Shown here: positions 3,283-64,000 of the stretch, piece after piece
How the letters are laid out: every line of letters starts with the position of its first letter
How positions within the stretch are numbered: the stretch's first letter is position 1
Origin: Octopus sinensis
Lineage: Eukaryota
NCBI RefSeq assembly: GCF_006345805.1
Contig: NC_043000.1
Coordinates: forward strand, 31,558,001 to 31,622,000
DNA: 64,000 bases
Direction: 5' to 3'
Program-made: the position numbers and the translations under genes
The notes under the pieces: model-generated
Database searches by the model: none
What the model saw: the letters and a program-made list of their open reading frames with translations, nothing else
Told to the model about the DNA's origin: nothing

Positions 3283-3844
3283 CAGCTCAATATTGCTGCT
3301 CCTTCTGTACATCAATGATTTACGTAGCATCCCATCCATGATCATCCACTCTTCATTACTACTTAACCTTTAAAGGCAGCGAGCTGGCAAAATTGATATC
3401 ACGCCGGACAAAATGCTTAAGCCGCACTTTTTCTGACTTTACATTCTGAGTTCAAATTCGGAGTGGGACTGAACCTGGAACCATGTGGTTCGTAAGCAAG
3501 CTACTTACCACACAGCCACTCCTACGCCTTATTAAAAACCAAACAACAACAACTCAAAAGCATTTTTCGATTTTGTCCCTTTTAGCATAAAATAAAAATA
3601 CAAACACCTGTCAATCAAGAAACCATCATTGCCCCTTAATCATGAACAGCACTCAGCGGCAACCCTCATAATCAGTCCAAATGCGAGCTGTTCCTATCCT
3701 GGGTGGATGAAAGCAAGAATTGCATCCCAATGATTAGCCTTTCTTTTCAAGAGCACAACCTGCCTCATAACCCGACCATTATTGATAATCTACGAAGCTC
3801 AAGTAACGCTCACCATAAAATATGGTTTCCTCGTCTGAGACAAT

Positions 3845-4233
3845 GATACCGCTGCTGCTGCTTGCTTGTTTGTTGAGCGAAGAGGTCTTCGTCCCAAAGT
3901 GAGAGAAGTCCGAAACCTGGTCTTTTGCTATTCGTAAGACCCGCAGAAGAGAAAGTAGGTCAACCCTCGACACCGAAAGCATCGACGGGTGGATGAATGC
4001 GCATCCAGGCTCAGCGGTTGCGTAGGAAGTCGGGGACAAGAAACAGGAAGAAAGTATGAGAGAAAGTTGGAGCGAAAGAGTACAACAGGGGTCGCCACCA
4101 CCCCCTGCCGTAGCCTCGTGGAGCTTTAGGTGTTTTCGCTCAATAAACACACACAACGCCCGGTCTGGGAATGGAAACCGCGATCCTCCGACCGCGAGTC
4201 CGCTGCCCTAGCCATTGGGCCATTGCGCCTCCA
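3845..4233 (-). mobile_element. tRNA-Arg-like SINE family B (resembles Octopus OR SINEs)
   Basis: Head GGAGGCGCAATGGCCCAATGGCTAGGGCAGCGGACTCGCGGTCGGAGGATCGCGGTTTCCATTCCC with TCG anticodon-like loop and (AGC)n tail. Confidence 0.85.
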
Positions 4234-6137
4234 CTGCTGCTGCTGCTACTCACTGGGAAGCCATAGACGATATCCAGAAAAAGAAGTCCTGATCAGAATA
4301 AAGTCACTCACAAACACACTATATTCTCTACACCACAAACCTACTGTTTTCTTTCCACCTCTAGCTGGGCTCGTGTCGCCTCTACTCAGGCAATGTTGTC
4401 CTACTCATCTCTTTTCTGCATCCACCTCCCCCTTTTTTTCATTCATCCCCACCAGGCCCCACGCTAATCATCTCCAATCCACCTCCACAAGAAAAAAAAA
4501 TGGCAGTATTGCTATCCCATTTCTTGTTTATGTCTGTCACAGCTTTTAAATTTCAAAGGTGCGAATGGAACGTTAATTGCAATAATGCCATCGATGAAGG
4601 GAAGCTTAGGAAAGCCATAGCCACCATTACTTCCACCACATTCAGCAAGTAAACAGACAGACACACACACACACACAAAGACAGACAGTCAGAGAGACAG
4701 ACAGAGCAATCTAAAGAAAAACAATAGGAAGACGAGATACGTTCCTGATCCAAAAGATTTGTCTTTCGCTGAGAGAGATGGAAAGAGTTAATGAAGTTCC
4801 GGATGTTATCTTTCTTTGGAAGATGGGTATTGAGGGGAGGATAGAAGAGGAAAACCAATGTATGAATGTACGTGTGTGTGTGTGTGTGTGTGTGTGCATA
4901 CAAAAATATACATACGATACACATATACATATCTATGTGTATATATATTTATCTATCGATACATACATACATACATACAAGCTCATAATTATGGATAGTG
5001 TTTTAGAATGCTGTTGGCTTCAGAAGCTTTAAATAACAATTTCAACCCATCTTCACAAACTAACAAAGCGCTTAATATTCCTGCAGTACTCCTGCTCCTT
5101 ACACTGATAAACTGTGCCTATCTATTCACATAGAGAAAAATTACCTGAGCTGAAAGAGATGATATGCATGATGTTGAAAATGTGAATCTTAGATCGATAA
5201 TTGGCAAGAATTGGTGCTCTTGGGAAAAGAACTCTATATACACACCGTACACATTATATACACTTCACGGACTGTACTACGTCTCCCAAGGTTAAATTAG
5301 CTTCAAGTAAAGGCGAAAAAATTGATAGGTTTTATGTGGTTATTAAGTGCATTGTGGTGCGTCGTTTTAGAATAAGGTGGCATTTAGTGTGAAAATCTTG
5401 AATGTTTTTGGTTTGAGACCAAGTCACTTTCCCACATGGTTTGCATATGTGATGGCAAGACAGGTGGCACAGAGATGACTAATTTGTGAAGTTTTGTGGA
5501 GGCTTTGCAGCATAGAGAAGTAAAATAGACAGTGTATAACTATATTGAGGCTCTCTCTTTACGGGCCTAATTACACAGCCATTATAATAGGAGTCCACGC
5601 AGCTGGTAGAGATTGTTTTAGTAAAGGGGCCAAAAAGAATGATAAAGTTTGGAGGTCAGGAGAGCTGTCAGGGACATTTCTACATGAAAGTGTTTTTGCT
5701 TTTCAGCTGTTCTTGCAGGTGTTGTAGTAGGAGACACTCGTCACCCAGATGTTAGAGGTGGGGATTTTTTATGCTAAATTTGTAGTCTATCCTTGTCTAT
5801 CCTAGTGCTACAATACAAAGATACGTGTCCTTCCCAAAGGGCTTAAGTTATTGGCTTTGGTTTTGTGAGAGATGCAAAGAGACATTATTCGAACTGGTTT
5901 ACAAATGATACAGGTGAGGGTAGGGCTAAAGCACACGCCCAATTTAATTACAGTAAAACTGGTAGAACTCCACTTACGAGTATTCAGTAGAGATCGTGAG
6001 TCGAAGGGTCCTGTAAGATATATGGATATGCATTGAGCAGCCATATCTGGACAGTGGCCCATAAATCCACTAGGTATACATCCACAAAGCTAGAACTTTC
6101 TGAATCGATTCTTTGTAAGTCTGACATTTAGACTGAA

Positions 6138-6184
<47 letters not shown>

Positions 6185-6347
6185 ATAAAAATGATAAGAC
6201 AACAAAAGAAAGAAAGAGACCTCGATATTGTGTAAATAGAGGAATTTATCTGTAAATGTAATATGTGACAATTATTCGGTAGCCATGATAAAACTCCGAG
6301 GTTCGGATGCCGAGGTGGAAATCCACGCTGCCATCTCTTCAGTTATC

Positions 6348-6460
6348 CGGCCATATCACGTTGAAAAGACCGGTTCTCGTCCGATCACCGAAGTTAAGCA
6401 ACGTCGAGCCTAGTTAGTACTTAGATGGGTGACCTCTTGGGAAACCTAGGTGCTGTAAGC
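6348..6460 (+). rRNA. 5S rRNA: 5S rRNA copy lacking the first ~5 nt, probably retroposed or captured
   Basis: CGGCCATATCACGTTGAAA...CGATCACCGAAGTTAAGCAACGTCGAG...GATGGGTGACC...GGTGCTGTAAGC matches metazoan 5S. Box A and box C regions present, CCTAG/CTAGG helix retained, T9 run at 6472-6480. Confidence 0.9.
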
Positions 6461-6489
6461 GTCATACATTGTTTTTTTTTCCGATGGCC

Positions 6490-6551
6490 GAATAACTAAA
6501 GAGATGGAGGCGTGGATTTCCACTTCGGCATCCGAAACTCGGAGTTTTATC
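6490..6551 (+). ncRNA. Type I hammerhead ribozyme motif (right arm, G5A variant); mirrored copy on the minus strand at 6287-6348
   Basis: Arm consensus GATAA-CTGAAGA-GATG..CATC-C-GAAA-CT(CGG)AG-TT^TTATC has stems I, II and III. Right arm core reads CTAAAGA; left arm has GAAC instead of GAAA. Confidence 0.7.
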
Positions 6552-6870
6552 ACGGCTACCGAATAATTGTCACATATTACATTTACAGATAAATTCCTCT
6601 ATTTACATAAAATCGAGGTCTCTTATTTTCTTTTGTTGTCTTACCATTTTTATCAATAATATATATATATATATATATAAAGGAGGTAGTCAGAATTTTG
6701 GGTAATTACATATTTTGCGCTTTCATCTCATTTCGGAGATGAAAGCGTTGAATAAATAATTATCCAAAATTCCGACTACCTCCTTTTTTCTGAATGTTTG
6801 AACTAAATTTGTACATCATTTCAGTATGTGTGTGTGTGTGTGTGTGTGTGTGTACGTGCGTGCGTTTGTA

Positions 6871-9744: not shown

Positions 9745-10375
9745 GAGTCAAGCACGCGGAATTCTGTTCTTGATTCGACGGTCATTCGGAATGCTCACAG
9801 CAGCCATATTCCTACCACTCTATGTCACGCTGGTGAGACCCATATTGGAGTACGGGATTCAAGCCTCTTCTCCTTATCTCCTCAAAGACATACAGCATCT
9901 CGAAAGAGTCCAGAAGCTGGCTACCCGCATGGTTCATGGTCTCAAAAATTTGTCCTACGAAGAAAGGCTGAGGACGCTCGACCTTTATTCTCTTGAAAAA
10001 CGCCGCCGCCGTGGTGATCTCATTCTCGCCCACAACATCATAAGCGGAAAGTGTTCTTCACTCCTGCTCCAGAGCTGTTCTTCACTCCTGCTCCAGAGCG
10101 TCGGCTGCGGGGTCATTCCGAAAAGCTCTACCTGCGACGATTTCATTTCAATCGAAGGAGAGGAGCTTTCTCCGTCCGGGTTGCGGATCCGTGGAACAAG
10201 CTGCCAGACGAGATGGTGAAGATGCCGACGACCGCTTTGTTCAAAGCCTCCCTTGACCTCAAGTGGCCTGAACTCTTTACATGAACACCACCCTGTACTT
10301 AACTCCATGTCCCCCTACATGGCCTTGCTATTTTCTTTTGAGCCAAATTAACTAACTAACTAACTAACTAACTAA
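9745..10375 (+). mobile_element. 5'-truncated CR1/L2-type LINE 3' end with (AACT)n tail
   Basis: LYVTLVRPILEYG...HLERVQKLATRMVHGLKNLSYEERLRTLDLYSLEKRRRRGDLI, then RRGAFSVRVADPWNKLP. Tail at ~10349-10374. Confidence 0.9.
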
Positions 10376-13269: not shown

Positions 13270-13709
13270 ATTACGAATTAAAAGCAGCTCCAGTAATGTA
13301 AGCACATACATAGTGTTTTTTTTTGTTTTTTTTTTTATTACAGGGCCGTTTGCTGCGGTATGGCGTCCAGGGAAAGCTTCCAACATGACGCCGAGGGTTT
13401 GAGAACAACTCGCACCTAAGTGATCGAGAATGGTAGATACCGATTCATTTCGCTTCGAGGTGATCCGATCAAATGGTACTGATAAGCCAAAATAATGGTG
13501 AAATTTTGTTATCTATCATTCTCGGTCACCTCGAGGCGAATTGTCTCGCCAGGTCTGGGACACTCGGTGTTTCTTTTAACACTCGGCGTCATGTAGAGAG
13601 CTTTCTATGGATACTATCCCGCAGCAGACGTTCCTTTACGCAAAACACATGCACTATGTGTGCGCGACCGACGATGTTTACATTACTAGAGCTGCTTTTA
13701 ATTCGCAAT
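13270..13709. mobile_element. ~440-bp imperfect palindrome (foldback/MITE-like), with a partial extra arm at ~13030-13150
   Basis: Three nested complementary blocks: 13270-13306/13673-13709, ~13346-13400/13578-13632 and 13418-13452/13497-13532. Confidence 0.75.
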
Positions 13710-14364
13710 ACATACATACATACATACATACATACATGCTCTCACTCCTCGTTAATTAACTAAGCTCGAAAATAAAATGGAAGGTAACATGGTCGACGCT
13801 AGTGAGACGAAAATATTAGACATTCTTGACAATAATTTCGTTATGCGAAATTATTTCGCTGTGAGACTTCCTTAACTTTTTTGTACTTGTTTACACGTAA
13901 AGCTCAACAATAAAGGAGCAGGACTAGGGTCAGGGCCATTCCAACTGGAGAAGAAAAGTGGGTTGACTTCGTTTAGGAGGGCTCAACGTCCTATTTTCTC
14001 TGTTCTGAGATCGTATTTAGAACTGTCTTATACAGCGATAAAAATAGAGGATTTGTTTTGGGAAAGATTCGGCAGCTATCTCTAGCATGCCAAGTGATTG
14101 CTTATAGGTTTCTTTTGTAGCAGTTTAGTTCTAAGTCTAAGTTAATTAAACAGATCTGAAATTAAAGGTGTAACTTCTCTTTCTTTATATCCAATCTTCT
14201 ATGTTCCATTATGCGTTTTTTTCATACTGTGTGTCGTGATTTGATAGTAAGTTGGTTGCTATTTCTAGTAGGTTCAGTGACTACGCTAGGATTTTCTCGA
14301 TTCTCTGATCAATAAAAAAAATCAGGAAAGGACAGCCAACAAATATACAGAAGACGCGGGACGA

Positions 14365-14736
14365 TGTTGCTGCTGCTGCTGCTGCTTGTTTGTTTGTTGA
14401 GCGAAGCGATCTTCGTCCCAGAGCTCGCAAGATCCCGCCTCTGTAGTGGGAGAAGTCTGAAACGTGGTCCTTTGCTATTCGTAAGACCCGCAGAAGAGAG
14501 CATCGACGGATGGATGAATGCGCATCCAGGCTCAGCGATTGCGTAGGAAGTCGGGGAAAGAGTGAGAGAAAGCTGGAGCGAAAGAGTACAACAGGGGTCA
14601 CCTTCCCCTGCCGGAGCCTCGTGGAGCTTTAGGTGTTTTCGCTCAATAAACACACACAACGCCCAGTCTGGAAATCGAAACCGCGATCCTCCGACCGCGA
14701 GTCCGCTGCCCTAACCATTGGGCCATTACGCCTCCA
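14365..14736 (-). mobile_element. Family B SINE
   Basis: Same head, body and tail as 3845-4233. Confidence 0.85.
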
Positions 14737-18818: not shown

Positions 18819-20260
18819 CAGACAGTGGCTCTCGTGTCTTCTGATCTTAACTGATTGGAAGTGGTATCGTGTACATTGTTTCTTTACTACCCACAAGGGG
18901 TTAAACACAGAGAGGACAAACAAAGACAAACGGATTAAATCGATTGAGCCCAACGCTTCGATCACCACTGGTATCACTTTTACATTACACTCTCGCATTC
19001 CATTCAGTCTTGCCATTTCCACTATCAGTTCTGAGTATTTGGTGATTGTTTTCAACCTCTTTACTCACAATATTCATGTCATTTGGTATGGCTACGTCAA
19101 TGACGGCATTTGTCTCTCTTATTTAATGACAATATCTGGCCGACGGTGTTCGATTACACGATCCGTCTGAAAATCCTAGTCCCAGAGTATCGTTACTTTT
19201 CTATCCTCCTGCATAACTTTACTTGGTATATGCTCATACCAGTTCTCTGTTACTACATAATGGTATTTATGGTATAAGAGCCAATGACGATACACATACA
19301 GTTTATTGTGGCGGCGCTTGTATTCTTTTCGTGCAAGGCTCTCACATCCACTTACCAAGTGGGTCACATTTTCCCCACTATTTCCACAGAGTCTGTATTT
19401 CTGGTTATCAGAAGTATTATAGATGTTACACTTCTCTGAATTGGTAGCGAGAGCTTGGTCTTATGCAGCAGTAATCAGGCTTTCGGTGGTACGCTTCAAA
19501 TCACCTCGCTTAAGCCATGCCCACGATGCTGTATTATTCTTAACGTCCTGTGTACTCCTTTCAAACTGCGCGTGCATTCTTCTTTTCTCTTCTCCTCAGC
19601 TCTTTGGTTAAACTCTGCCTTGCTCATCTTGTCATCTGCATTTACACCACAATCCACTACAAGCTGCTTTCTTCCCTCCTTTCATATTAACTTCTGAGCA
19701 TTTGGTAATCTCAGATTCCATACCAATATCCCTACTACACATCTGGGCTGTTTTGGTTAAGGAATCTATCAGCTTTTTAGATTTCCCAATTTCAGGTCAT
19801 CTATAAACAGAAGATGATTCAATGATGGATCTTTCTTCCTACATCGGTAACCCAGCTTTACTTTCCTAAGTGTTATTGTTATGGGCATTAGTGCAATTAC
19901 AAAAAGTAACGGAGAAAACGAAACAACTTGGAAGATTCCCCTTTTAATATTAACTTCTCCAAGGAATACATTACTTGAGTACAATTTGGTTTTCCACTCT
20001 TTCATGCTATGCATCAGAAAATTTGCGGTGTTGTCAGCAACACCAAACATCTGCTGGCATTCAACGATCCAAGAATGAGGCATCATATCATATACCTTCT
20101 TAAAGTCAATCCATGCTATAGTCATGTTTGTATGATGTTTTCTTACAATGCTTCAAAACTGTTTTATCGATGACCAGGTGATCCTTGGTACCCTGAGAAT
20201 TCTTCCTACATCCTTTTTGTTCCCTTGGTAGTACTTCTTCCTGTGCTAGAAAAGTGTATG
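18380..20260 (-). mobile_element. Fragmented R4/Dong-like LINE (RT to RLE), interrupted by (AAT)n and a SINE tail
   Basis: [20 protein letters not shown]...GIFQVVSFSPLLFVIALMP...LNHLLFIDDLKL (19769-20125). THLVSGCESLARKEYKRRHN (19176-19367). VIPVVIEALG (~18960). Confidence 0.85.
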
Positions 20261-21508: not shown

Positions 21509-22100
21509 GTATCAATATATACTGAGAGAGTAAGAGAGAGACATACTTGATTTCATACACACACACACACACACACACACACATAGTTACGCACACACAT
21601 ACGCATGCATCTATCCGTGATTGTTCTATAAACAATCTGTCGAGATAACCTTATCAAGTAATAGCACCACTAACACAATAGAACACAGTAAGGACTTATA
21701 AAAAAAACGTTTAATCTGCAGTGTATATTCACAGAAAGCACCCATAAACCTCACAAACCCTTCTGATTGGTGTAAATTGCTAAATATCCTTCAACTAAGC
21801 ATTCGATACAACCAAAACATTCAAATCTCCTATGAAATACATTTATAATTCTTGGCTGAAGATACGAACACATGTAATAATAGCTCCATGGATATTGCAA
21901 ATCATATTTGTAATGTCATATGGATGGGGTATGCCACCACAAAAACTTGTGCTGTGTGAAACGTACGTAGCAATGCATTAAAGAATTTATAAATTTTCAA
22001 CCAAAGGTTCTGGTTATCACGATATATATGTGACCGCGTGTGTACCGTTGGCGATTTTTTTCCCTCCGTCTTCCCTTCTTTGGATCTTTCCTTTTCCTAT

Positions 22101-22135
22101 GTTTCTGACGAAGAGCTCCGCTCGAAACGTTAAAC
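22101..22135 (+). ncRNA. Minimal type I hammerhead ribozyme with canonical core, in a PLE pLTR-like solo repeat (~22030-22220)
   Basis: GTTT-CTGACGA-A-GAGC-tcc-GCTC-GAAACGTT^AAAC: 4-bp stem I, 4-bp stem II, palindromic AACGTT stem III. Confidence 0.8.
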
Positions 22136-22239
22136 CCTGCTTCTTTCCTGAGCGTCCAATAATACTATACTTGTTCCACGTCCTCGCGTTATTGTGTTTT
22201 CTCTTTGTGTTTTCATGTTTGGATTAACTATATATATAT

Positions 22240-25316: not shown

Positions 25317-25367
<51 letters not shown>

Positions 25368-25369
25368 AA

Positions 25370-27445
25370 AAAAGTCAGATAGAAAATGCTAAAATAATTT
25401 TATAAAAAAAATTTCAGTACGGGTTCAGTCATTGAGACTTTTTCAACTGTAACAATTAAACAATTAACTTTGGAAAAATTAGAAGAAAAGTTTTTTAAAA
25501 AAGAATATTTGTATAGTGTTCAAATACAAGTGGTATTTTCTTTGTTTCTGCCTGTCTCTGTCTCTCTTGTTTACTCTTGTGGGTTCGAGCTGTTGTGAAT
25601 TCTTGGTAGGGTGAAGAAGAATGTGGGAGTGCCATGACAGTAGTATGTTGAATGGTCAGCTGTGCTGCTTCCCTGAAAATGACCCCCAGTTGATGGTAGC
25701 AGTTGCTGTTCAATTCATGAAAATATTTCTTTTGAATGTTTTGTTTATGAAATTTGTGAGGGTGTTATTCTAAACAGCATTAGTGATAAGAAGGAGAAGA
25801 AGAAGGGAGAAAGAGAAGGAGGAATAGGAAAATAATGTAGGTAGTGTGAAAGTAGTAAGGTGTTAAACGTTTAAATGACTTAAAATTGGCACGTTATGGG
25901 TTATAGCAGTGATTGGGACTGTTTTTTAATGAATTCTTGGGAATCTCTTGATTGTATCATTTTTAATATTTTCGTGTGTATTTGTGTTATTCTAAGGCCG
26001 AGGTGAATATGTCGTAGACGCGTTCAGAAGGATCCTGCATTTTGTAATAAAGAGAGTCTCTTTACTAATTCGTTGGCTCCAGGTTGTATCGTCCCTGAAT
26101 TGGTAGAGGGGAAAATTCTAAAGCTTGGATATTTGTTATTGGCGCAAATGTCTATGTGAATGCTATTTTTCTGTTTTGGGGAATTTTTATCTGGGATATG
26201 TGCAGGGCCATTCTTTTACGTAGACTATTTTTTGTTTGGCCTATGTATTGCTCTTGAAACCCAGAGCAGGTTAGTGTGTGTATCAGGTTCTCCGAAGCAC
26301 ATGTGAAGTTGATTTTCACTGTGAAACGTTGTCCCTGTTTGAAGGAGAACTCTGATCCCTCAATTAGATAATCGCATATTCTACAATTGGGTCTTCCACA
26401 TTTTTTTTACTGACGGCTTCTGTGTTGTTGAACTTATTCGGGCTTGTGTTAGGAGACTTTTCATAGATTTGGGCTGTCTCTTGCTTTTTATGATGGTGTG
26501 TGTCTGGAGGATTAAGTTCATTCTGTGGTCCTTTTTTAGCAGGTGTATGTTTTGGAGGATGGTGTCGAAGGCTTCATTGTTGAGAGGGTTGTGTATGGAG
26601 ATGTATGGTAGGGCTTTTGGTTGCAAATTTTTCTTTAATTTGGGATGTCTTAGTTCCTGGATGTTGAGTTGAAGGGCACGTTCAAAGCATATGTCAATTA
26701 GTGAAGGTGGGTAGTTCCTGGTGATGAGTGTATCTTTTAGTTCATGTAGTCGTGTGTCTCTGGTATTTGCATTAGAAACTATAGTACATATCCTTTTTGC
26801 TAGGTTGAAGGGGATATTCATTCTGGTGTGTCTGGGGTGGCATGAATTGAATGGTAGATATTGCTTGGAATCCGTAGGCTTATAGTATATATCTGTTTCT
26901 ATTACGTTGTTAGATTTCTTAATGAAGATGTCGAGGAAGGGGAGTTGTTGCTGGCTATATTCCATCGTGAATTGAATGTTTACGTCAAGTCCATTTAAAA
27001 GTGTTTGGAATTCTTTAAGTTCCTCTATATTTTCATGCCAAAGAATGAAACATTCATCTAGGTATCTCTTCTAATTACTTTCTATGTAGAGGGAGAAAGG
27101 GCTGCTGTATCTTTCTAGAACCTTACGATAAAGACTAATTTCTAGATATTCCATGACTAGGTTAGTAAAGGAGGGGGCCATTCGCGTACCCATCGCAGTC
27201 CCCGATTTTTGTCGGTAGAAGTTGTCTTTGAAAGCGAAGTAGTTATTTTCCAGGTGGAATTTTAGCCCTTCTATCACGAATTCTTTTTTGATGCGATGTG
27301 GGAGTTCGTTGGAGTAATTCACTAGCCAGAATTGAATTGCCATTTGTGTTTTTATTTGTGCATATGTTGATATGGGTAATTCGAGATGTGTTCACAGAAG
27401 TGATCAAGTGTTTTGTTCTTACCTTTTGAGGGGGTGTAGTTACTC
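25370..27445 (-). mobile_element. Degenerate Penelope-like retroelement: RT, GIY-YIG endonuclease and 3' pLTR
   Basis: RT fragments YRQKSGTAMGTRMAPSFTNLVMEYLE (ORF 27071-27343) and IYYKPTDSKQYLPFNSCHP (ORF 26381-26965). GIY-YIG motif CSGFQEQYIGQTKNSLRKRM at ~26210-26280. HHR-like CAG-TTGAAAA-AGTC-tcaat-GACT-GAACCCGTA-CTG at 25415-25449. Confidence 0.9.
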
Positions 27446-31130: not shown

Positions 31131-32568
31131 TATTATTATATTATTATTATTATTATTATTATTTTATTATTATTATTATTATATCCTCCTCGCGGAAATC
31201 TGTAGTAAAAGACAAAATATTTATCCGCTGGAGCTGAAGAGGAAACAGAATATAGCTAATATGGTCGTCTCTTTGTGACTATTGGCTGTTTGTTAAACAA
31301 CATGTTGATGTGTGAAGTATGGCGTCAATTTAATTTTGTCGTCAATATAATTAAAGTAGTTTCCAAGTATCGTAATTACTAAATTATACTAAATAACTTT
31401 TTAACATATATTTTATTTCAAAACATGTGCTTAATTCAATATAATTGCTCTTATATATTGATTCGATTTTTTTTTTCTTTTTCTTTTTAAAATTTAAATC
31501 AATCTTGACGTTGTGACTCCTCTCGCCATTTAAGTTTGCTGACTTAGCTGACAATTTAACAGCAAAGCTTGTCTGATGATCGCTTTTTTCTGAAAGAAAA
31601 ACAAATATTTAACTGGTCTTCATTTTTAAAACAGACATCCAGACTTGACAATGGGAGATGAAAAAAAGTGCTACGTTTCTTAATTAACAATGAATGGGAA
31701 CATTAATTTGTCTTCGCTGTAATTACAACATCAACACTTATATTACCAGATTTGATTAAGAAGTAGAAAATATATATTTCACATATATTGTAGACATTTT
31801 AATGAAATAATGTGTGAGGAAGTAAATTTAACAATTGTAATCTTTTGTAAACGAAGTGTGGTGTTGTGTGGAAATTTGTATTCTATATTGTAATGGAATG
31901 GAGGAATGCAAAACTTTTCTCCTTGGATAAGAATAACTATGAAAGAGATTGATAAGTATTAGTCTGGTTTGAGTCTATCGATTAGTCGTTAGAAGGAAGA
32001 TAAGGGCAAAGACAGGACTTGAAAAACAATTCTATTGGTATTTCAACACAATTTTTTCTTTTTGTCTAAGATTCTTGTTTTTAGGTTTGTGCGTGGTCAG
32101 GTATTTAACATGTTGAGCTGACTATCACAAAACCGTGGGTCCAATTGCTGGAACGAGTAGCGCATTGTGTCCTTAATCAAGGCACTCCATTTCATGTTGC
32201 TCCAGTCAGCTCATCTATAAATAAGTACCAGAATATTACTAGTGCAGCCCTCTCTCTGCCTCTATCTGTCCCATTCTCAATGTTCGACTGGATCAAGGAT
32301 AGAAAGGCCGAGATGGTGCTTGCATCAGTTCGTTTCTCTAAAGATGCCTAAAACAACTAAGGAGATTATTGTGCAAGCTCTCCATCAAAGCTTTATTGTT
32401 TTTCTCGGATGTTTCTATTCTGAATGCCTGGGTTCGTTTTCACTTCCGCAGCGCAATAACTTAAAACATCTCGTTAAAAACGCTAAAGTCATCGTGAATT
32501 GGAGGATTAAAACAATAAAGCCATCACAGATAAACAAAGATAAACCATTTCCAATTGTTTTATTTGTG

Positions 32569-47839: not shown

Positions 47840-48410
47840 CCCCACGCAATCCAACCCCACCCCTACCTTCACCCTCAGCCTATCCACATGCCCCACCTCT
47901 ACCCAACCCTCAGCCTAACCCACACCTCCACCTTTGCTTTCCCCACTTTCACCTCGCCACCTCCCAACACCATCACACATCACCACACACCACTACACCA
48001 TACACCACCATACCACACAACACCACATTACATCACATCACACCACCATGCATACACTAGCACTGACCATTTCCCGGCCCCACATGCACACACATACACA
48101 TGCACACACGCGCACGTCAAGGTCACCAGCCCTCTTCCATACGAACATACACGCTCTTATACACACGCATGCAAATCTTGTTTTTGGATCACCACTACTT
48201 TATTATTTCCCCTTCCTCTTAGCTCTCCTCTATGACCCCTCTGTCCGGCATTCGCCATGATAGATCGCTAGCCACTACACATATTTTCTCTCCTTGTTTC
48301 TTTCTGTGTTCCTTTCTGTGGAAGAGCGTAGGCTTGAAACGTTAAAGACTTTTTCACTTTCCGATCGTTAAACTAATACATGTTGTCTACACCACCTGTC
48401 TTCGTCTTTT
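47840..48410 (+). mobile_element. pLTR copy of the same PLE family, with hammerhead at 48312-48347
   Basis: Reverse complement of much of 34925-35400. HHR reads CTTT-CTGTGGA-A-GAGC-gtag-GCTT-GAAACGTT^AAAG. Confidence 0.8.
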
Positions 48411-48480
48411 GTATTTTGGGGGGTAATTCTCCCTGTATGTACATATTATCTATGTATGTATATATTATCTATGTATGTAA

Positions 48481-61683: not shown

Positions 61684-62075
61684 TGGAGGTGCAATTGCCA
61701 ATGGTTAGGGCAACGGACGCGCGGTCGGGGTATCGCGGTTTCGATTCCCAGACCGGGCGTTGTGTGCGTTTATTGAGCGAAAACACCCAAAGCTCCACGA
61801 TCTCTGGCAGGGGCTGGTGGCGACCCCTGTTGTACTCTTTCGCTCCAACTTTCTCTCACTCTTTCTTCCTGTTTCTTGTCCCCGACTTCCTACGCAACCG
61901 CTGAGCCTGGATACGCATTTATCCATCCGTCGATGCTCTCGGTGTCGGGGGTTGACCTGCTTTCTCCTCTGCGGGTCTTACGAATAGCAAAGAACTACGT
62001 TTCGGACTTCTCCCACTACAGAGGTGCGATCTTGCGAGATCTGGGACGAAGACCGCTTTGCTCAACAGCAACAGC
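61684..62075 (+). mobile_element. Family B SINE in opposite orientation
   Basis: Same head and body read on the + strand, with (CAG/CAA) tail. Confidence 0.85.
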
Positions 62076-62447
62076 TGCAGCAGTTGTAGTAGTATTAATA
62101 ATAGGAGGTTGGTTTCTCTCTCTCTCTTTCCCTCCCTCTCTCTGTACTCTTCAATCAGATGATCCCCTCCGTCGTCAACACCGACTCCTACGTCCGTGGT
62201 TGAGGACGGACACACGACCTCCATTGAAATAAATCCGTGTCTCTATAAATCTATCGGAATTTATTGATAGCAGCATGGCAGCCAACGTAGCAGTATATTA
62301 TCAATCAAATGATTTATCACTGTGCCAATAAACTGATCAAATATTAAGGTTTACCACAGAATATTTCGTACAAGCAAAACGTATTCTTTTTGTTTTTAAA
62401 CTGCCATTACGGATTGCTAGGCAAAGAGATGAACGTTATTACACACA

Positions 62448-62779: not shown

Positions 62780-63159
62780 GTTGTTGTTGCTGTTGCTGTT
62801 GAACGAACGGTCTTCGTCCCAGAGCTCGCAAGATGGGAGAAGTCCGAAACGTGGTCCTTTGCTATTCGTAAGACGCGCAGAAGAGAAAGCAGGTCAACCC
62901 CCGACACCGAGAGCATCGACGGATGTATGAATACGCATCCAGGCTCAGCGGTTGCGTAGGAAGTCGGGGACAAGAATCAGGAAGAAAGAGTGAGAGAAAG
63001 TTGGAGCGAAAGAGTACAACAGGGGTCGCCACCAGCTTCTGCCGGAACCACGTGGAGCTTTGGGTGTTGTCGCTCAATAAACACACACAACGCCCGGTCT
63101 GGGAATCGAAATCGCGATCCTCCGACTGCGAGTCCGCTGCCCTAACCATTGCACCTCCA
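62780..63159 (-). mobile_element. Family B SINE
   Basis: Same family; short internal deletion in the head region. Confidence 0.85.
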
Positions 63160-63489
63160 TTGTTGTTGTTGTTCTGGTGTAGGTGGGACTATGTGAAGTG
63201 TTTATTGGATGTGGTGCATGTAGGCCTGAGGGGTAGGTCTATAGGGTGGGAGATAGAAGAGAATCGACGAAAGAATGTTTGTAAGACTTGGGTTGATAGA
63301 AACATGTTGCCGAACGATTTCACATAGAGATATGACATTTTCAGGTTAATATGTCTATTCGGCCTTCTGTTTTTAGGTTGTCGCCTGTTTCGAAGTTACT
63401 ATCACCTATTCTTGTAAAAGTTTAATGAATATATACACTATAGGCGCAGGAGGGTTGTGTGGTAAGTAGCTTGCTTACGAACCACATAG

Positions 63490-64000
63490 TACCATCTTTC
63501 CTCCAAACATGGCTACGCGAATTTCGTCCAAACAATTCAGTTTTCGACTCGTCTGTCCATAGAACATTTTCCCAGAATGTATCAGATTTATCTTTATGTT
63601 CATAAACAAATTTTAAACGGGTATCTCTATGCCTTTTAGACAACAGTGGAGTTTTTCTAGGAGAGCGTGACTTCAGTTCATTCCTATGAAGTTCATTGCT
63701 GATTGTTAGTAGTGTAACATTAGTCCCTGAAGCTAACAAATCTTCTAGCAACTCCTTTCTGGTGATCATTGCATTTTTTCTTTTTTCGATTCTTCGCTTC
63801 ATTTTTCTTAAAGACCAGGGAAAATCTTGCATGGTGCACCGGATCTTATTCTGTTTTCAACAGTTCCCGATTTTTTTTATATCTTTGAATAAATGAAGAT
63901 ATGGTAGAAAATGGAATACGAAGGACTCTGATATTTTCCTGTAACTTTTACTTTCTTTCCACTGTTCAATAATTAAGTTTTCCACTGAATTTCTGAGTTC
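63490..64000 (-). mobile_element. Tc1-family transposase N-terminal fragment (HTH to first catalytic D)
   Basis: ITRKELLEDL...SRSPRKTPLLSKRHRDTRLKFVYEH...WENVLWTDESKTELFG. An HTH-like segment lies upstream. The fragment ends against a family C SINE head. Confidence 0.85.

What the first reader, a model, noticed from the sequence alone, without database searches (positions are those of the whole stretch)
6178..6660. 5S rRNA captured between two inverted hammerhead-bearing arms, with a snap-back signature
Seen: a near-complete 5S rRNA with 3' flank and T9 run sits between 177-bp inverted arms, inside (TA)n. Each arm holds a type I HHR pointing outward. The arms carry different core lesions (right G5A, left GAAA>GAAC), so their consensus core is intact. 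The left arm ends in CGGCCAT (6348-6354), which is also 5S nt ~6-12; the first 5 nt of 5S are missing, and the right arm begins with the complement ATGGCCG. Established: PLEs carry minimal HHRs in pLTRs and often leave inverted pLTR copies. Inference: a PLE RT copied a pLTR RNA, jumped onto an oligo-U-ended 5S precursor, and the cDNA end self-primed on its own CGGCCAT and recopied the arm. Alternatively this is an amplified 5S-headed, PLE-mobilised ribozyme element. I know of no description of such a unit.
Basis: partly seen in the sequence, partly recalled or inferred. Interest (0 to 1): 0.9.

Follow-up and report, generated by a model that had tools for sequence, protein, structure and literature searches.

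The report
5S pseudogene between inverted ribozyme-bearing arms
A dead copy of 5S ribosomal RNA in an octopod-like genome sits between two inverted 176-base retrotransposon-type ends that each carry a broken hammerhead-like ribozyme; it is most likely the scar of one messy Penelope-type retrotransposition, a useful clue to mechanism but not a new kind of element.

Summary
The anatomy is real. A 5S rRNA copy lies at 6343-6461 (Rfam 97.8 bits). It has a 10-nt trailer and a T9 run. Two inverted 176-nt arms flank it (6179-6354 and 6484-6659, 93% identical), and the whole unit sits inside a (TA)n tract. The left arm/5S junction is a 7-nt overlap, CGGCCAT. Each arm holds an outward-pointing hammerhead-like motif. 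Such a motif is expected 0.12 times per shuffled 64 kb. It is not canonical: both arms have an extra C before G12, and each has one core lesion. Rfam sees no hammerhead, but it also misses a perfect Penelope-type minimal hammerhead at 22101-22135.

The context favours a Penelope-like (PLE) origin. The window holds a decayed PLE gene whose 3' end abuts (TA)n. It also holds four copies of another hammerhead-bearing 3'-end family, all ending in (TA)n.

Most likely this is a single PLE-type insertion in which the reverse transcriptase jumped onto a 5S precursor. The inverted arm was then made through the 7-nt microhomology. Snap-back, twin priming and a replication template switch cannot be told apart here.

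No second copy of the arm was found anywhere I could search, and the source genome could not be searched. 5S/LINE-1 chimeras and inverted PLE ends are already known, so this is a new variant of a known kind.

The parts
6140..6179 (.). Left (TA)20 microsatellite, the presumed target tract
   Evidence: TRF, period 2, 20 copies, 100% match; sequence
6179..6354 (-). Left arm: an inverted copy of the 176-nt retroelement-type 3' end. Its ribozyme-sense strand is the minus strand, and its 3' end faces the left (TA)n.
   Evidence: Inverted repeat I1; alignment A1, 93% identity; blastn 93.2% over 176 nt
6279..6354 (-). Left hammerhead-like motif: core CTGAAGA 6342-6336, helix II 6335-6306, extra C 6305, GAAC 6304-6301 (A15.1C), helix III to 6293, predicted cut after 6292, helix I up to 11 bp
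   Evidence: Descriptor hit; the helix set is energetically feasible, -16.0 kcal/mol; MFE fold keeps helix I
6348..6354 (+). CGGCCAT: a 7-nt overlap shared by the inner end of the left arm and 5S nt 6-12. It is the reverse complement of ATGGCCG at 6484-6490.
   Evidence: Sequence; arm alignment ends here; 5S model identity begins at model position 6
6343..6461 (+). 5S rRNA copy. Genuine 5S sequence runs from about 6348, and the first 5 nt are replaced by arm sequence. Helices II-V are almost intact.
   Evidence: Rfam RF00001, 97.8 bits. Compared with two other eukaryotic 5S genes, L003 and L004
6462..6483 (+). 10-nt 3' trailer (6462-6471), T9 (6472-6480) and a CCG linker (6481-6483). T9 reads as the oligo-U end or terminator of an RNA polymerase III precursor.
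   Evidence: Sequence. The reading as a terminator is an inference.
6484..6659 (+). Right arm: the 176-nt retroelement-type 3' end, in the same sense as the 5S. Its 3' end faces the right (TA)n.
6484..6559 (+). Right hammerhead-like motif: helix I 5' strand 6485-6495, core CTAAAGA 6496-6502 (G5A at 6498), helix II 6503-6532, extra C 6533, GAAA 6534-6537, helix III ACTCGGAGT 6537-6545, predicted cut after 6546
   Evidence: Descriptor hit; -15.7 kcal/mol for the hammerhead helix set
6660..6679 (.). Right (TA)10 tract

Best explanation
This is a single, now dead, chimeric retro-insertion of the Penelope-like (PLE) type into a (TA)n microsatellite.

Inferred sequence of events:
1. Reverse transcription was primed from the nicked (TA)n target on the 3' end of a short hammerhead-bearing PLE-type RNA. 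This made the right arm.
2. At or near the 5' end of that template (...CCG-AUGGCCG), the enzyme jumped onto the oligo-U 3' end of a 5S rRNA precursor. That precursor was the 5S plus a 10-nt trailer and a U-run. The enzyme copied it back to about nt 6.
3. The new cDNA 3' end (...ATGGCCG-3') annealed to the complementary CGGCCAT at the inner end of an antisense arm copy. That copy was either the cDNA's own arm (snap-back) or a second cDNA primed from the other side of the break (twin priming). This produced the inverted left arm, which also runs out into (TA)n.

Since then the two arms have drifted about 7% apart. Each hammerhead picked up a different core lesion, so nothing indicates that the locus still functions. 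The 5S copy keeps its internal promoter region and a T9 stop. At most it could give a short 5S-like RNA that lacks helix I.

Shown: the anatomy, the microhomology, the motif statistics, and the PLE and (TA)n context. Inferred: every step of the mechanism, and the PLE identity of the arm.
For: - Anatomy and 7-nt overlap junction. A blunt join would give an overlap of 7 nt or more with probability about 4^-7.
- The 5S is in the same sense as the right arm, with T9 between them. This is the order expected for a template jump onto the 3' end of a polymerase III transcript, as in sense-oriented LINE-1 chimeras (PMC11838501).
- The hammerhead-like motif is improbable by chance. Helix III, ACUC-G-GAGU, is nearly palindromic, as in animal type I and PLE hammerheads that act as dimers (PMC4209133).
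- Both arms point their ribozyme-sense 3' ends outward into (TA)n. Five other PLE-type 3' ends show the same geometry: the decayed PLE at 27391-26155 (-), which ends at (TA)n 25365; four copies of a minimal-hammerhead family; and the L002 PLE.
- Five of seven hammerhead-like hits in the window have a (TA)>=6 tract 89-143 nt downstream, against 12% of all positions.
- Published PLE traits match: an inverted 5'-truncated copy at the 5' end, (TA)n insertion bias, and retrotransposition of host RNAs in trans (PMC8557442); and pairs of minimal hammerheads on opposite strands 100-700 bp apart (PMC4209133).
- The 7% divergence between arms argues against an assembly or read palindrome artefact.
- The hammerhead segment has diverged no less than the rest of the arm: 7 differences in 77 nt, against 5 in the remaining 99 nt. 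This fits a dead insertion.
Against: - No PLE with this arm as its 3' end was found. The arm has no similarity to the PLE fragments in the window or to L001/L002.
- The motif departs from every described hammerhead by an extra C between helix II and G12 in both arms. Its large helix II and long helix I are unlike the minimal PLE hammerheads seen elsewhere in this window.
- Rfam hammerhead models do not match. This is weak evidence, because they also miss a perfect minimal hammerhead.
- Both arms stop at exactly the same base. That needs either snap-back or a discrete 5' end of the template RNA.
- Copy number in the source genome is unknown. Only this window, four small loci, JGI metagenomes and predicted-protein collections could be searched.
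Confidence: 0.55

Rival explanations
1. Two-step origin. A simple 5S-arm chimeric retro-insertion (5S, T9, CCG, arm) first landed in (TA)n. Later a DNA-level event duplicated the arm in inverted orientation: either a replication template switch or fold-back priming. The nascent strand switched within the self-complementary (TA)n, copied the arm backwards, and returned at the CGGCCAT microhomology. This deleted the first 5 nt of the 5S.
For: (TA)n is self-complementary and lies at both outer ends. The inner junction is a 7-nt microhomology, which is typical of replicative template switching. The product is identical to the one expected from cDNA snap-back.
Against: It needs two separate events. 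PLE insertions are already known to arise with an inverted copy in a single event (PMC8557442). Nothing in the sequence separates the age of the arm duplication from the age of the 5S capture.
Confidence: 0.15
2. The locus is one copy of an amplified family: a foldback-like, non-autonomous element made of two ribozyme-bearing arms around a 5S-derived core. It would be mobilised by a PLE or another enzyme, and the 5S part might serve as a polymerase III promoter.
For: 5S-derived promoters have been recruited repeatedly by mobile elements, for example SINE3, Cassandra and Ajax (PMC10886601). Hammerhead-bearing SINE-like elements exist in Schistosoma (from my own knowledge). Copy number in the source genome could not be measured.
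Against: There is no second copy in 64 kb. None was found in about 43 kb of fetched loci (L001-L004: one Octopus vulgaris locus and three from unidentified organisms), in JGI metagenomes, or in predicted-protein space. T9 lies directly after the 5S and would stop polymerase III before the arm. A full-length transcript would fold into a 176-bp hairpin, which is a poor template. The hammerheads show no conservation between the arms.
Confidence: 0.12
3. The arms are long terminal inverted repeats of a cut-and-paste DNA transposon remnant, such as a Tc1/mariner-type MITE with a TA target duplication, that happens to enclose a 5S pseudogene. The hammerhead resemblance is then fortuitous.
For: Symmetric arms of equal length flanked by TA. 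A Tc1-type transposase fragment is present in the window at 63422-63832. A small palindromic MITE-like element sits right next door at 6679-6786.
Against: The arm termini (TTATTGATAAAAATG...) do not resemble the usual Tc1/mariner or hAT ends (my own knowledge). The hammerhead-like motif is improbable by chance. Its orientation and its distance to (TA)n match the bona fide PLE 3' ends in the same window. The inner junction is a microhomology with the 5S, not an arbitrary filler boundary.
Confidence: 0.08
4. Assembly or sequencing artefact: a palindromic chimera.
For: Craig et al. note that PLE tandem and inverted structures cause problems in shotgun assemblies (PMC8557442).
Against: The arms differ at 12 of 176 positions. 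Artefactual palindromes are near-identical. The flanks are ordinary unique sequence.
Confidence: 0.03

Closest known systems
5S rRNA/LINE-1 and U6/LINE-1 chimeric retro-insertions of mammals (Buzdin-type chimeric retrogenes; catalogue in PMC11838501)
   Same: A small polymerase III RNA is fused in one insertion event to the 5'-truncated 3' end of a retrotransposon. The proposed mechanisms are reverse transcriptase template switching and twin priming. Each chimera is a one-off that does not propagate.
   Different: Here the partner is not a LINE with a poly(A) tail. It is a hammerhead-bearing, (TA)n-targeting, PLE-type end. The 5S is nearly full length and in sense orientation, whereas the mammalian ones are mostly antisense and truncated at positions 46 or 90. 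A second, inverted copy of the retroelement end closes the other side.
Penelope-like element insertions with an inverted 5'-truncated copy next to the upstream pseudo-LTR (Evgen'ev & Arkhipova 2005; Craig et al. 2021, PMC8557442), and pairs of minimal hammerheads on opposite strands 100-700 bp apart (Cervera & de la Pena 2014, PMC4209133)
   Same: Head-to-head inverted ends, a hammerhead in each end, insertion into a (TA)n microsatellite, and no recognisable target-site duplication.
   Different: There is no reverse transcriptase/endonuclease gene in the unit. A host 5S RNA copy sits at the head-to-head junction. The hammerhead has a long helix I, a 30-nt helix II and an extra C before G12, unlike the minimal PLE form.
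Animal non-LTR retrozymes (Cervera & de la Pena 2020, PMC7229834; Li et al. 2026 preprint, 10.64898/2026.07.22.740005)
   Same: Short non-coding units with a type I hammerhead, thought to derive from PLE pLTRs.
   Different: Retrozymes are direct tandem repeats that give circular RNAs. This locus is an inverted pair with no tandem copy, so the two ribozymes can never lie on one transcript in the same sense.
Mobile elements that recruited 5S sequences: SINE3, Cassandra and Ajax TRIMs (PMC10886601)
   Same: A 5S-derived sequence embedded in a retroelement, between or within its terminal repeats.
   Different: In those families the 5S part is a conserved promoter in many copies, and the repeats are direct LTRs. 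Here there is a single copy, a T9 stop lies directly after the 5S, and the repeats are inverted.

Membership tests
5S ribosomal RNA (Rfam RF00001) | Covariance-model score above the gathering threshold over the full model | tested here: met
   97.8 bits against a threshold of 38, model positions 1-120
5S ribosomal RNA (functional gene) | Helix I formed by the paired 5' and 3' ends | tested here: not met
   Three non-canonical pairs in helix I. The first 5 nt are arm sequence. It is therefore a pseudogene or captured copy.
Hammerhead ribozyme, type I | Core C3 U4 G5 A6 N7 G8 A9 | tested here: inconclusive
   The left arm has CUGAAGA, which is intact. The right arm has CUAAAGA, which is G5A.
Hammerhead ribozyme, type I | G12 A13 A14 followed by the A15.1-U16.1 pair and a non-G at position 17 | tested here: inconclusive
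   The right arm has GAAA...U-U, which is intact. The left arm has GAAC, which is A15.1C.
Hammerhead ribozyme, type I | Helix II closes directly onto G12, with no inserted nucleotide at the 3' side | tested here: not met
   Both arms have an extra unpaired C (6533 and 6305) between the helix II 3' strand and G12. The published extra nucleotide lies on the 5' side of helix II (PMC4209133).
Hammerhead ribozyme, type I | Three helices around the core, with helix I open | tested here: met
   Helix I is 4-5 bp plus 6 bp, helix II is 4 bp plus an extension, and helix III is 3 bp with a triloop and is nearly palindromic.
Hammerhead ribozyme, type I | Match to a curated Rfam hammerhead model | tested here: not met
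   No hit at E<=10. The test is weak, because a perfect PLE minimal hammerhead at 22101-22135 is also missed.
Hammerhead ribozyme, type I | Self-cleavage at the predicted site | not testable with these tools
   Needs in vitro transcription of monomer and dimer constructs.
Penelope-like element (arm as its pLTR or 3' end) | Sequence continuity with a PLE reverse transcriptase / GIY-YIG endonuclease gene in some copy | tested here: inconclusive
   No coding sequence within the unit. No similarity to the PLE at 27391-26155 or to the PLEs in L001/L002. The source genome could not be searched.
Penelope-like element (arm as its pLTR or 3' end) | Hammerhead in the terminal repeat, with the 3' end abutting a microsatellite target and inverted or tandem copies | tested here: met
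   The same geometry is seen in five other PLE-type ends. The trait is described in PMC8557442 and PMC4209133.
5S-derived SINE (SINE3 type) | The 5S head drives a polymerase III transcript that runs through the body to the tail; many copies | tested here: not met
   T9 directly follows the 5S. No other copy was found.
Cut-and-paste MITE | Terminal inverted repeats matching a transposase-encoding partner; a defined target-site duplication | tested here: inconclusive
   Inverted arms are present, but no partner was found. The TA flanks cannot be told apart from the microsatellite.

The most novel reading that the evidence does not exclude
The locus is a natural record of how Penelope-like elements build their unexplained inverted ends. 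The reverse transcriptase jumps end-to-end onto another RNA, here a La-type oligo-U-tailed 5S precursor. The cDNA 3' end then primes on a short complementary stretch of its own first-strand product (snap-back). On this reading, inverted PLE copies in general are self-primed hairpin cDNAs, and PLEs can make 5S (and perhaps other small-RNA) chimeric pseudogenes in invertebrates, as LINE-1 does in mammals.
Probability: 0.3. Interest if true: 0.6.

Novelty: new variant of a known kind. Interest (0 to 1): 0.4.

Why it matters
The way PLEs generate tandem and inverted terminal repeats is explicitly called undefined in the field (PMC8557442). No in vitro system for it exists. A head-to-head junction that contains an identifiable foreign RNA, with a 7-nt microhomology on one side and an oligo-U jump on the other, gives unusually readable breakpoints. 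If more such junctions are found in octopod genomes, they could distinguish snap-back from twin priming. They would also show that PLE reverse transcriptases make chimeric small-RNA pseudogenes, a behaviour documented so far mainly for LINE-1. As a single decayed locus it has no evident function for the host.

Tried and rejected
1. Rfam at permissive thresholds on the arms gave no hammerhead. A control showed Rfam also misses a perfect PLE minimal hammerhead, so this negative was set aside.
2. blastn of the arm, the 5S and the whole unit against the window gave no other copy. The same search against fetched loci L001-L004 gave none.
3. Exact-pattern scans gave 0 hits: the hammerhead core and an arm segment in JGI metagenomes, and the core in viral contigs.
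4. I translated open frames of the arm to catch spurious ORF calls on other copies.
   - A profile of the 55-aa frame against 1.84 billion representatives gave only three spurious repeat-protein hits.
   - The 57-aa arm-plus-5S frame against 5.8 billion proteins gave only two unrelated eukaryotic 5S genes from marine metagenomes, matched through the 5S part.
   - Exact look-ups of window ORFs were not on record.
5. I tested for sequence similarity between the arm and the other PLE-type 3' ends in the window. Local alignment scores were no better than shuffles. An apparent match in the T-rich tails was rejected as a composition effect.
6. I considered that T9 is really an A9 poly(A) tail of the right arm read on the minus strand. 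I rejected this because the ribozyme-sense 3' ends of both arms face outward, like every PLE-type end in the window.
7. I considered two independent arm insertions either side of a resident 5S. I rejected this because no (TA)n remains at the inner ends.
8. I considered RNA ligation of 5S to a hammerhead-cleaved 5'-OH end, as RtcB does for U6/L1 (PMC6789731). I rejected this because the junction (6483/6484) lies 63 nt upstream of the predicted cleavage site.
9. An 8-nt direct repeat, CCGAATAA (6488-6495 and 6559-6566), was judged compatible with chance.

Full report
**Observation**

- Rfam places a full-length 5S rRNA match at 6343-6461 on the plus strand (97.8 bits, E 4.6e-20).
- Agreement with the 5S consensus begins at model position 6 (CGGCCAUA).
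- The first five positions cannot pair with the intact 3' strand of helix I, so the 5' tip of the 5S is missing.
- After the 5S come a 10-nt trailer, T9 (6472-6480) and CCG.
- The flanking arms, 6179-6354 and 6484-6659, are inverted copies of 176 nt. They differ at 12 positions and have no indels.
- Outside them lie (TA)20 and about (TA)10.
- Arm homology ends exactly at CGGCCAT (6348-6354), which is also 5S nt 6-12. The right arm starts with its complement, ATGGCCG.
- An overlap of 7 nt at a junction is far beyond what blunt joining gives (about 4^-7). Annealing was therefore involved in making this junction.

**The ribozyme claim**

Read on the outward-pointing strand, each arm has the parts of a type I hammerhead.
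- Helix I: 4-5 bp next to the core plus a further 6 bp, reaching the very inner end of the arm.
- Core: CUGAAGA in the left arm, CUAAAGA in the right.
- Helix II: a 30-nt element.
- GAAA in the right arm, GAAC in the left.
- Helix III: ACUC-G-GAGU, which is nearly palindromic.
- U at position 17, which predicts cleavage after 6546 on the plus strand and after 6292 on the minus strand.

My descriptor allowed one core mismatch and one inserted base. It finds both arms, while dinucleotide shuffles of the window give 0.12 hits per 64 kb. The helix set is energetically feasible at about -16 kcal/mol.

Three reservations apply.
- Both arms share an extra unpaired C between helix II and G12. The published extra nucleotide in PLE and viroid hammerheads is on the other side of helix II (PMC4209133). 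The 'intact consensus core' is therefore not fully canonical.
- No Rfam hammerhead model matches, even at E<=10. A control shows Rfam also misses a perfect PLE-type minimal hammerhead at 22101-22135, so this negative carries little weight.
- The descriptor was tuned after seeing the motif.

The hammerhead segment has diverged between the arms at least as much as the rest of the arm: 7 differences in 77 nt, against 5 in the remaining 99 nt. There has been no selection on it since the duplication.

**Context**

The window comes from an octopod or close relative. A decayed PLE gene lies on the minus strand at about 27391-26155. It has a reverse transcriptase, a CX4CxxC linker and a GIY-YIG endonuclease. 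Its best matches are a hypothetical protein of Octopus vulgaris (65% identity) and proteins of Argonauta hians. Its 3' end runs into (TA)n at 25365.

A relaxed hammerhead scan gave seven hits in the window. Five of them have a (TA)>=6 tract 89-143 nt downstream in the ribozyme sense, whereas only 12% of positions do.

Four copies of one minimal-hammerhead 3'-end family are present, and all four end at (TA)n:
- 22031-22229 (+)
- about 48161-48446 (+)
- about 35181-34891 (-)
- 11182-10993 (-)

A PLE relative from another organism (L002) shows the same order: gene, minimal hammerhead, about 55 nt, then (TA)n. The order 'hammerhead, about 100 nt of T-rich tail, then TA microsatellite' is therefore the signature of PLE 3' ends here. 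Both arms show it, at 113 nt. The arm is nevertheless a different family with a larger hammerhead, and has no detectable similarity to these elements.

**Copy number**

This is the key open question, and I could not settle it. No second copy of the arm or of either junction was found in any of the following:
- the window;
- about 43 kb of fetched loci L001-L004;
- JGI metagenomes or viral contigs;
- predicted-protein collections searched with translated arm frames.

The only hits were two unrelated eukaryotic 5S genes. They do show that features such as UUAGAUGGG in the window's 5S are natural variants rather than decay. The source genome itself is not in any searchable collection here.

**Mechanism**

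The simplest account has one PLE-type target-primed reverse transcription event.
1. Priming from the nicked (TA)n on the arm RNA made the right arm.
2. At the template's 5' end (CCG-AUGGCCG), the enzyme jumped onto the oligo-U 3' end of a 5S precursor. This gives the order 5S, trailer, T9, CCG, arm, all in one sense.
3. Copying stopped about 5 nt short of the 5S 5' end.
4. The cDNA end, ...ATGGCCG-3', paired with CGGCCAT of an antisense arm copy and was extended out to (TA)n. That (TA)n could in turn anneal to the other side of the break.

Three sources for the antisense arm copy cannot be told apart from one locus:
- a second cDNA primed from the opposite nick (twin priming, as proposed for antisense LINE-1 chimeras; PMC11838501);
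- a later replication template switch between the two (TA)n tracts.

Both arms stop at the same base. This favours either snap-back or a discrete 5' end of the template RNA.

I rejected four alternatives.
- Two independent arm insertions: no TA repeats remain at the inner ends.
- RNA ligation to a ribozyme-cleaved end: the junction lies 63 nt from the predicted cut.
- A poly(A) reading of the T9: both ribozyme-sense 3' ends face outward.
- A polymerase III-driven 5S-headed SINE: T9 would terminate transcription before the arm.

**Comparison with known systems**

- Capture of 5S rRNA by a retrotransposon reverse transcriptase is known. About 10% of 253 catalogued LINE-1 chimeras involve 5S (PMC11838501).
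- An inverted 5'-truncated copy next to a PLE, (TA)n insertion bias, and trans-mobilisation of host RNAs are described for PLEs (PMC8557442).
- So are pairs of minimal hammerheads on opposite strands 100-700 bp apart (PMC4209133).
- 5S sequences inside retroelement repeats occur in Cassandra and Ajax (PMC10886601).

What I did not find described is a host small RNA sitting at the head-to-head junction of a PLE-type inverted pair.

**Verdict**

- The PLE link is circumstantial but strengthened by the context.
- The hammerhead is a non-canonical and now broken variant.
- Snap-back is one of three equivalent routes to the same product.

This is a new variant of a known kind: a chimeric retro-insertion. 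It is probably a one-off and non-functional, and of moderate interest as a mechanistic fossil. Interest 0.4.

Noticed in passing
window 26155-27391 (-), 3' end to 25366, (TA)n 25319-25365: Decayed Penelope-like element with reverse transcriptase thumb motifs, a CX4CxxC linker and a GIY-YIG endonuclease at the C-terminal side. It has frameshifts and stops. The best protein match is an Octopus vulgaris hypothetical protein (65% identity), followed by Argonauta hians. Its 3' end abuts a TA microsatellite.
   Followed up: partly
window 22031-22229 (+); ~48161-48446 (+); ~35181-34891 (-); 11182-10993 (-): Four copies of one family of PLE-type 3' ends with a minimal hammerhead, all ending at (TA)n. 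Only the 22.1-kb copy has an intact core (CUGACGA...GAAA, cut after 22131). The other three share CUGU[A/G]GA (A6U). The 22.1-kb copy is a 199-nt unit with TA repeats on both sides.
   Followed up: partly
window 6679-6786: A 108-bp palindromic, MITE-like element (51-nt arms, 86% complementary, 6-nt loop) directly abuts the right (TA)n of the finding. No other copy is present in the window.
   Followed up: partly
window 31158-31253 (-): Rfam U5 snRNA hit just above threshold (42.1 bits against 40). Only the 5' stem-loop part of U5 is present, and it runs straight into a long (AAT)n/(ATA)n microsatellite. It may be a truncated U5 retro-pseudogene, which would make it a second small-RNA copy next to a microsatellite in this window.
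   Followed up: no
window 13479-13513 (+): A hammerhead-like descriptor hit with one core mismatch (G8A) lies inside a roughly 90-bp unit bounded by inverted repeats (TTCGCTTCGAGGTGATC... / ...GGTCACCTCGAGGCGAA). No TA tract lies downstream. It is probably a chance match or an unrelated MITE.
   Followed up: no
window 3779-4549, 14309-14659, 61876-62232, 62923-63327: Repeated ORF-like segments (MCVFIERKHLKLHEA..., ...SPTSYATAEPGCAFIHPSMLS...) mark several copies of an unidentified interspersed repeat.
   Followed up: no
window 63422-63832 (-); 19769-20125 (-); 9770-10219 (+): Other transposon debris: a Tc1/mariner-type transposase fragment (HTH_Tnp_Tc3_2, E 1.4e-14) at 63422-63832, and a reverse transcriptase fragment at 19769-20125 (a weak RVT_1 match, 25.9 bits, below Pfam's 29.6 cut-off). 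The ORF at 9770-10219 gave no Pfam match, and I only guess that it is LINE-derived.
   Followed up: no
L004 424-542 and L003 335-454: Two 5S rRNA genes on short marine-metagenome contigs (one of them from TARA) were retrieved only because a gene caller had translated across them. Their terminator T-runs follow within about 4-6 nt of the 5S end, unlike the 10-nt trailer in the window.
   Followed up: partly
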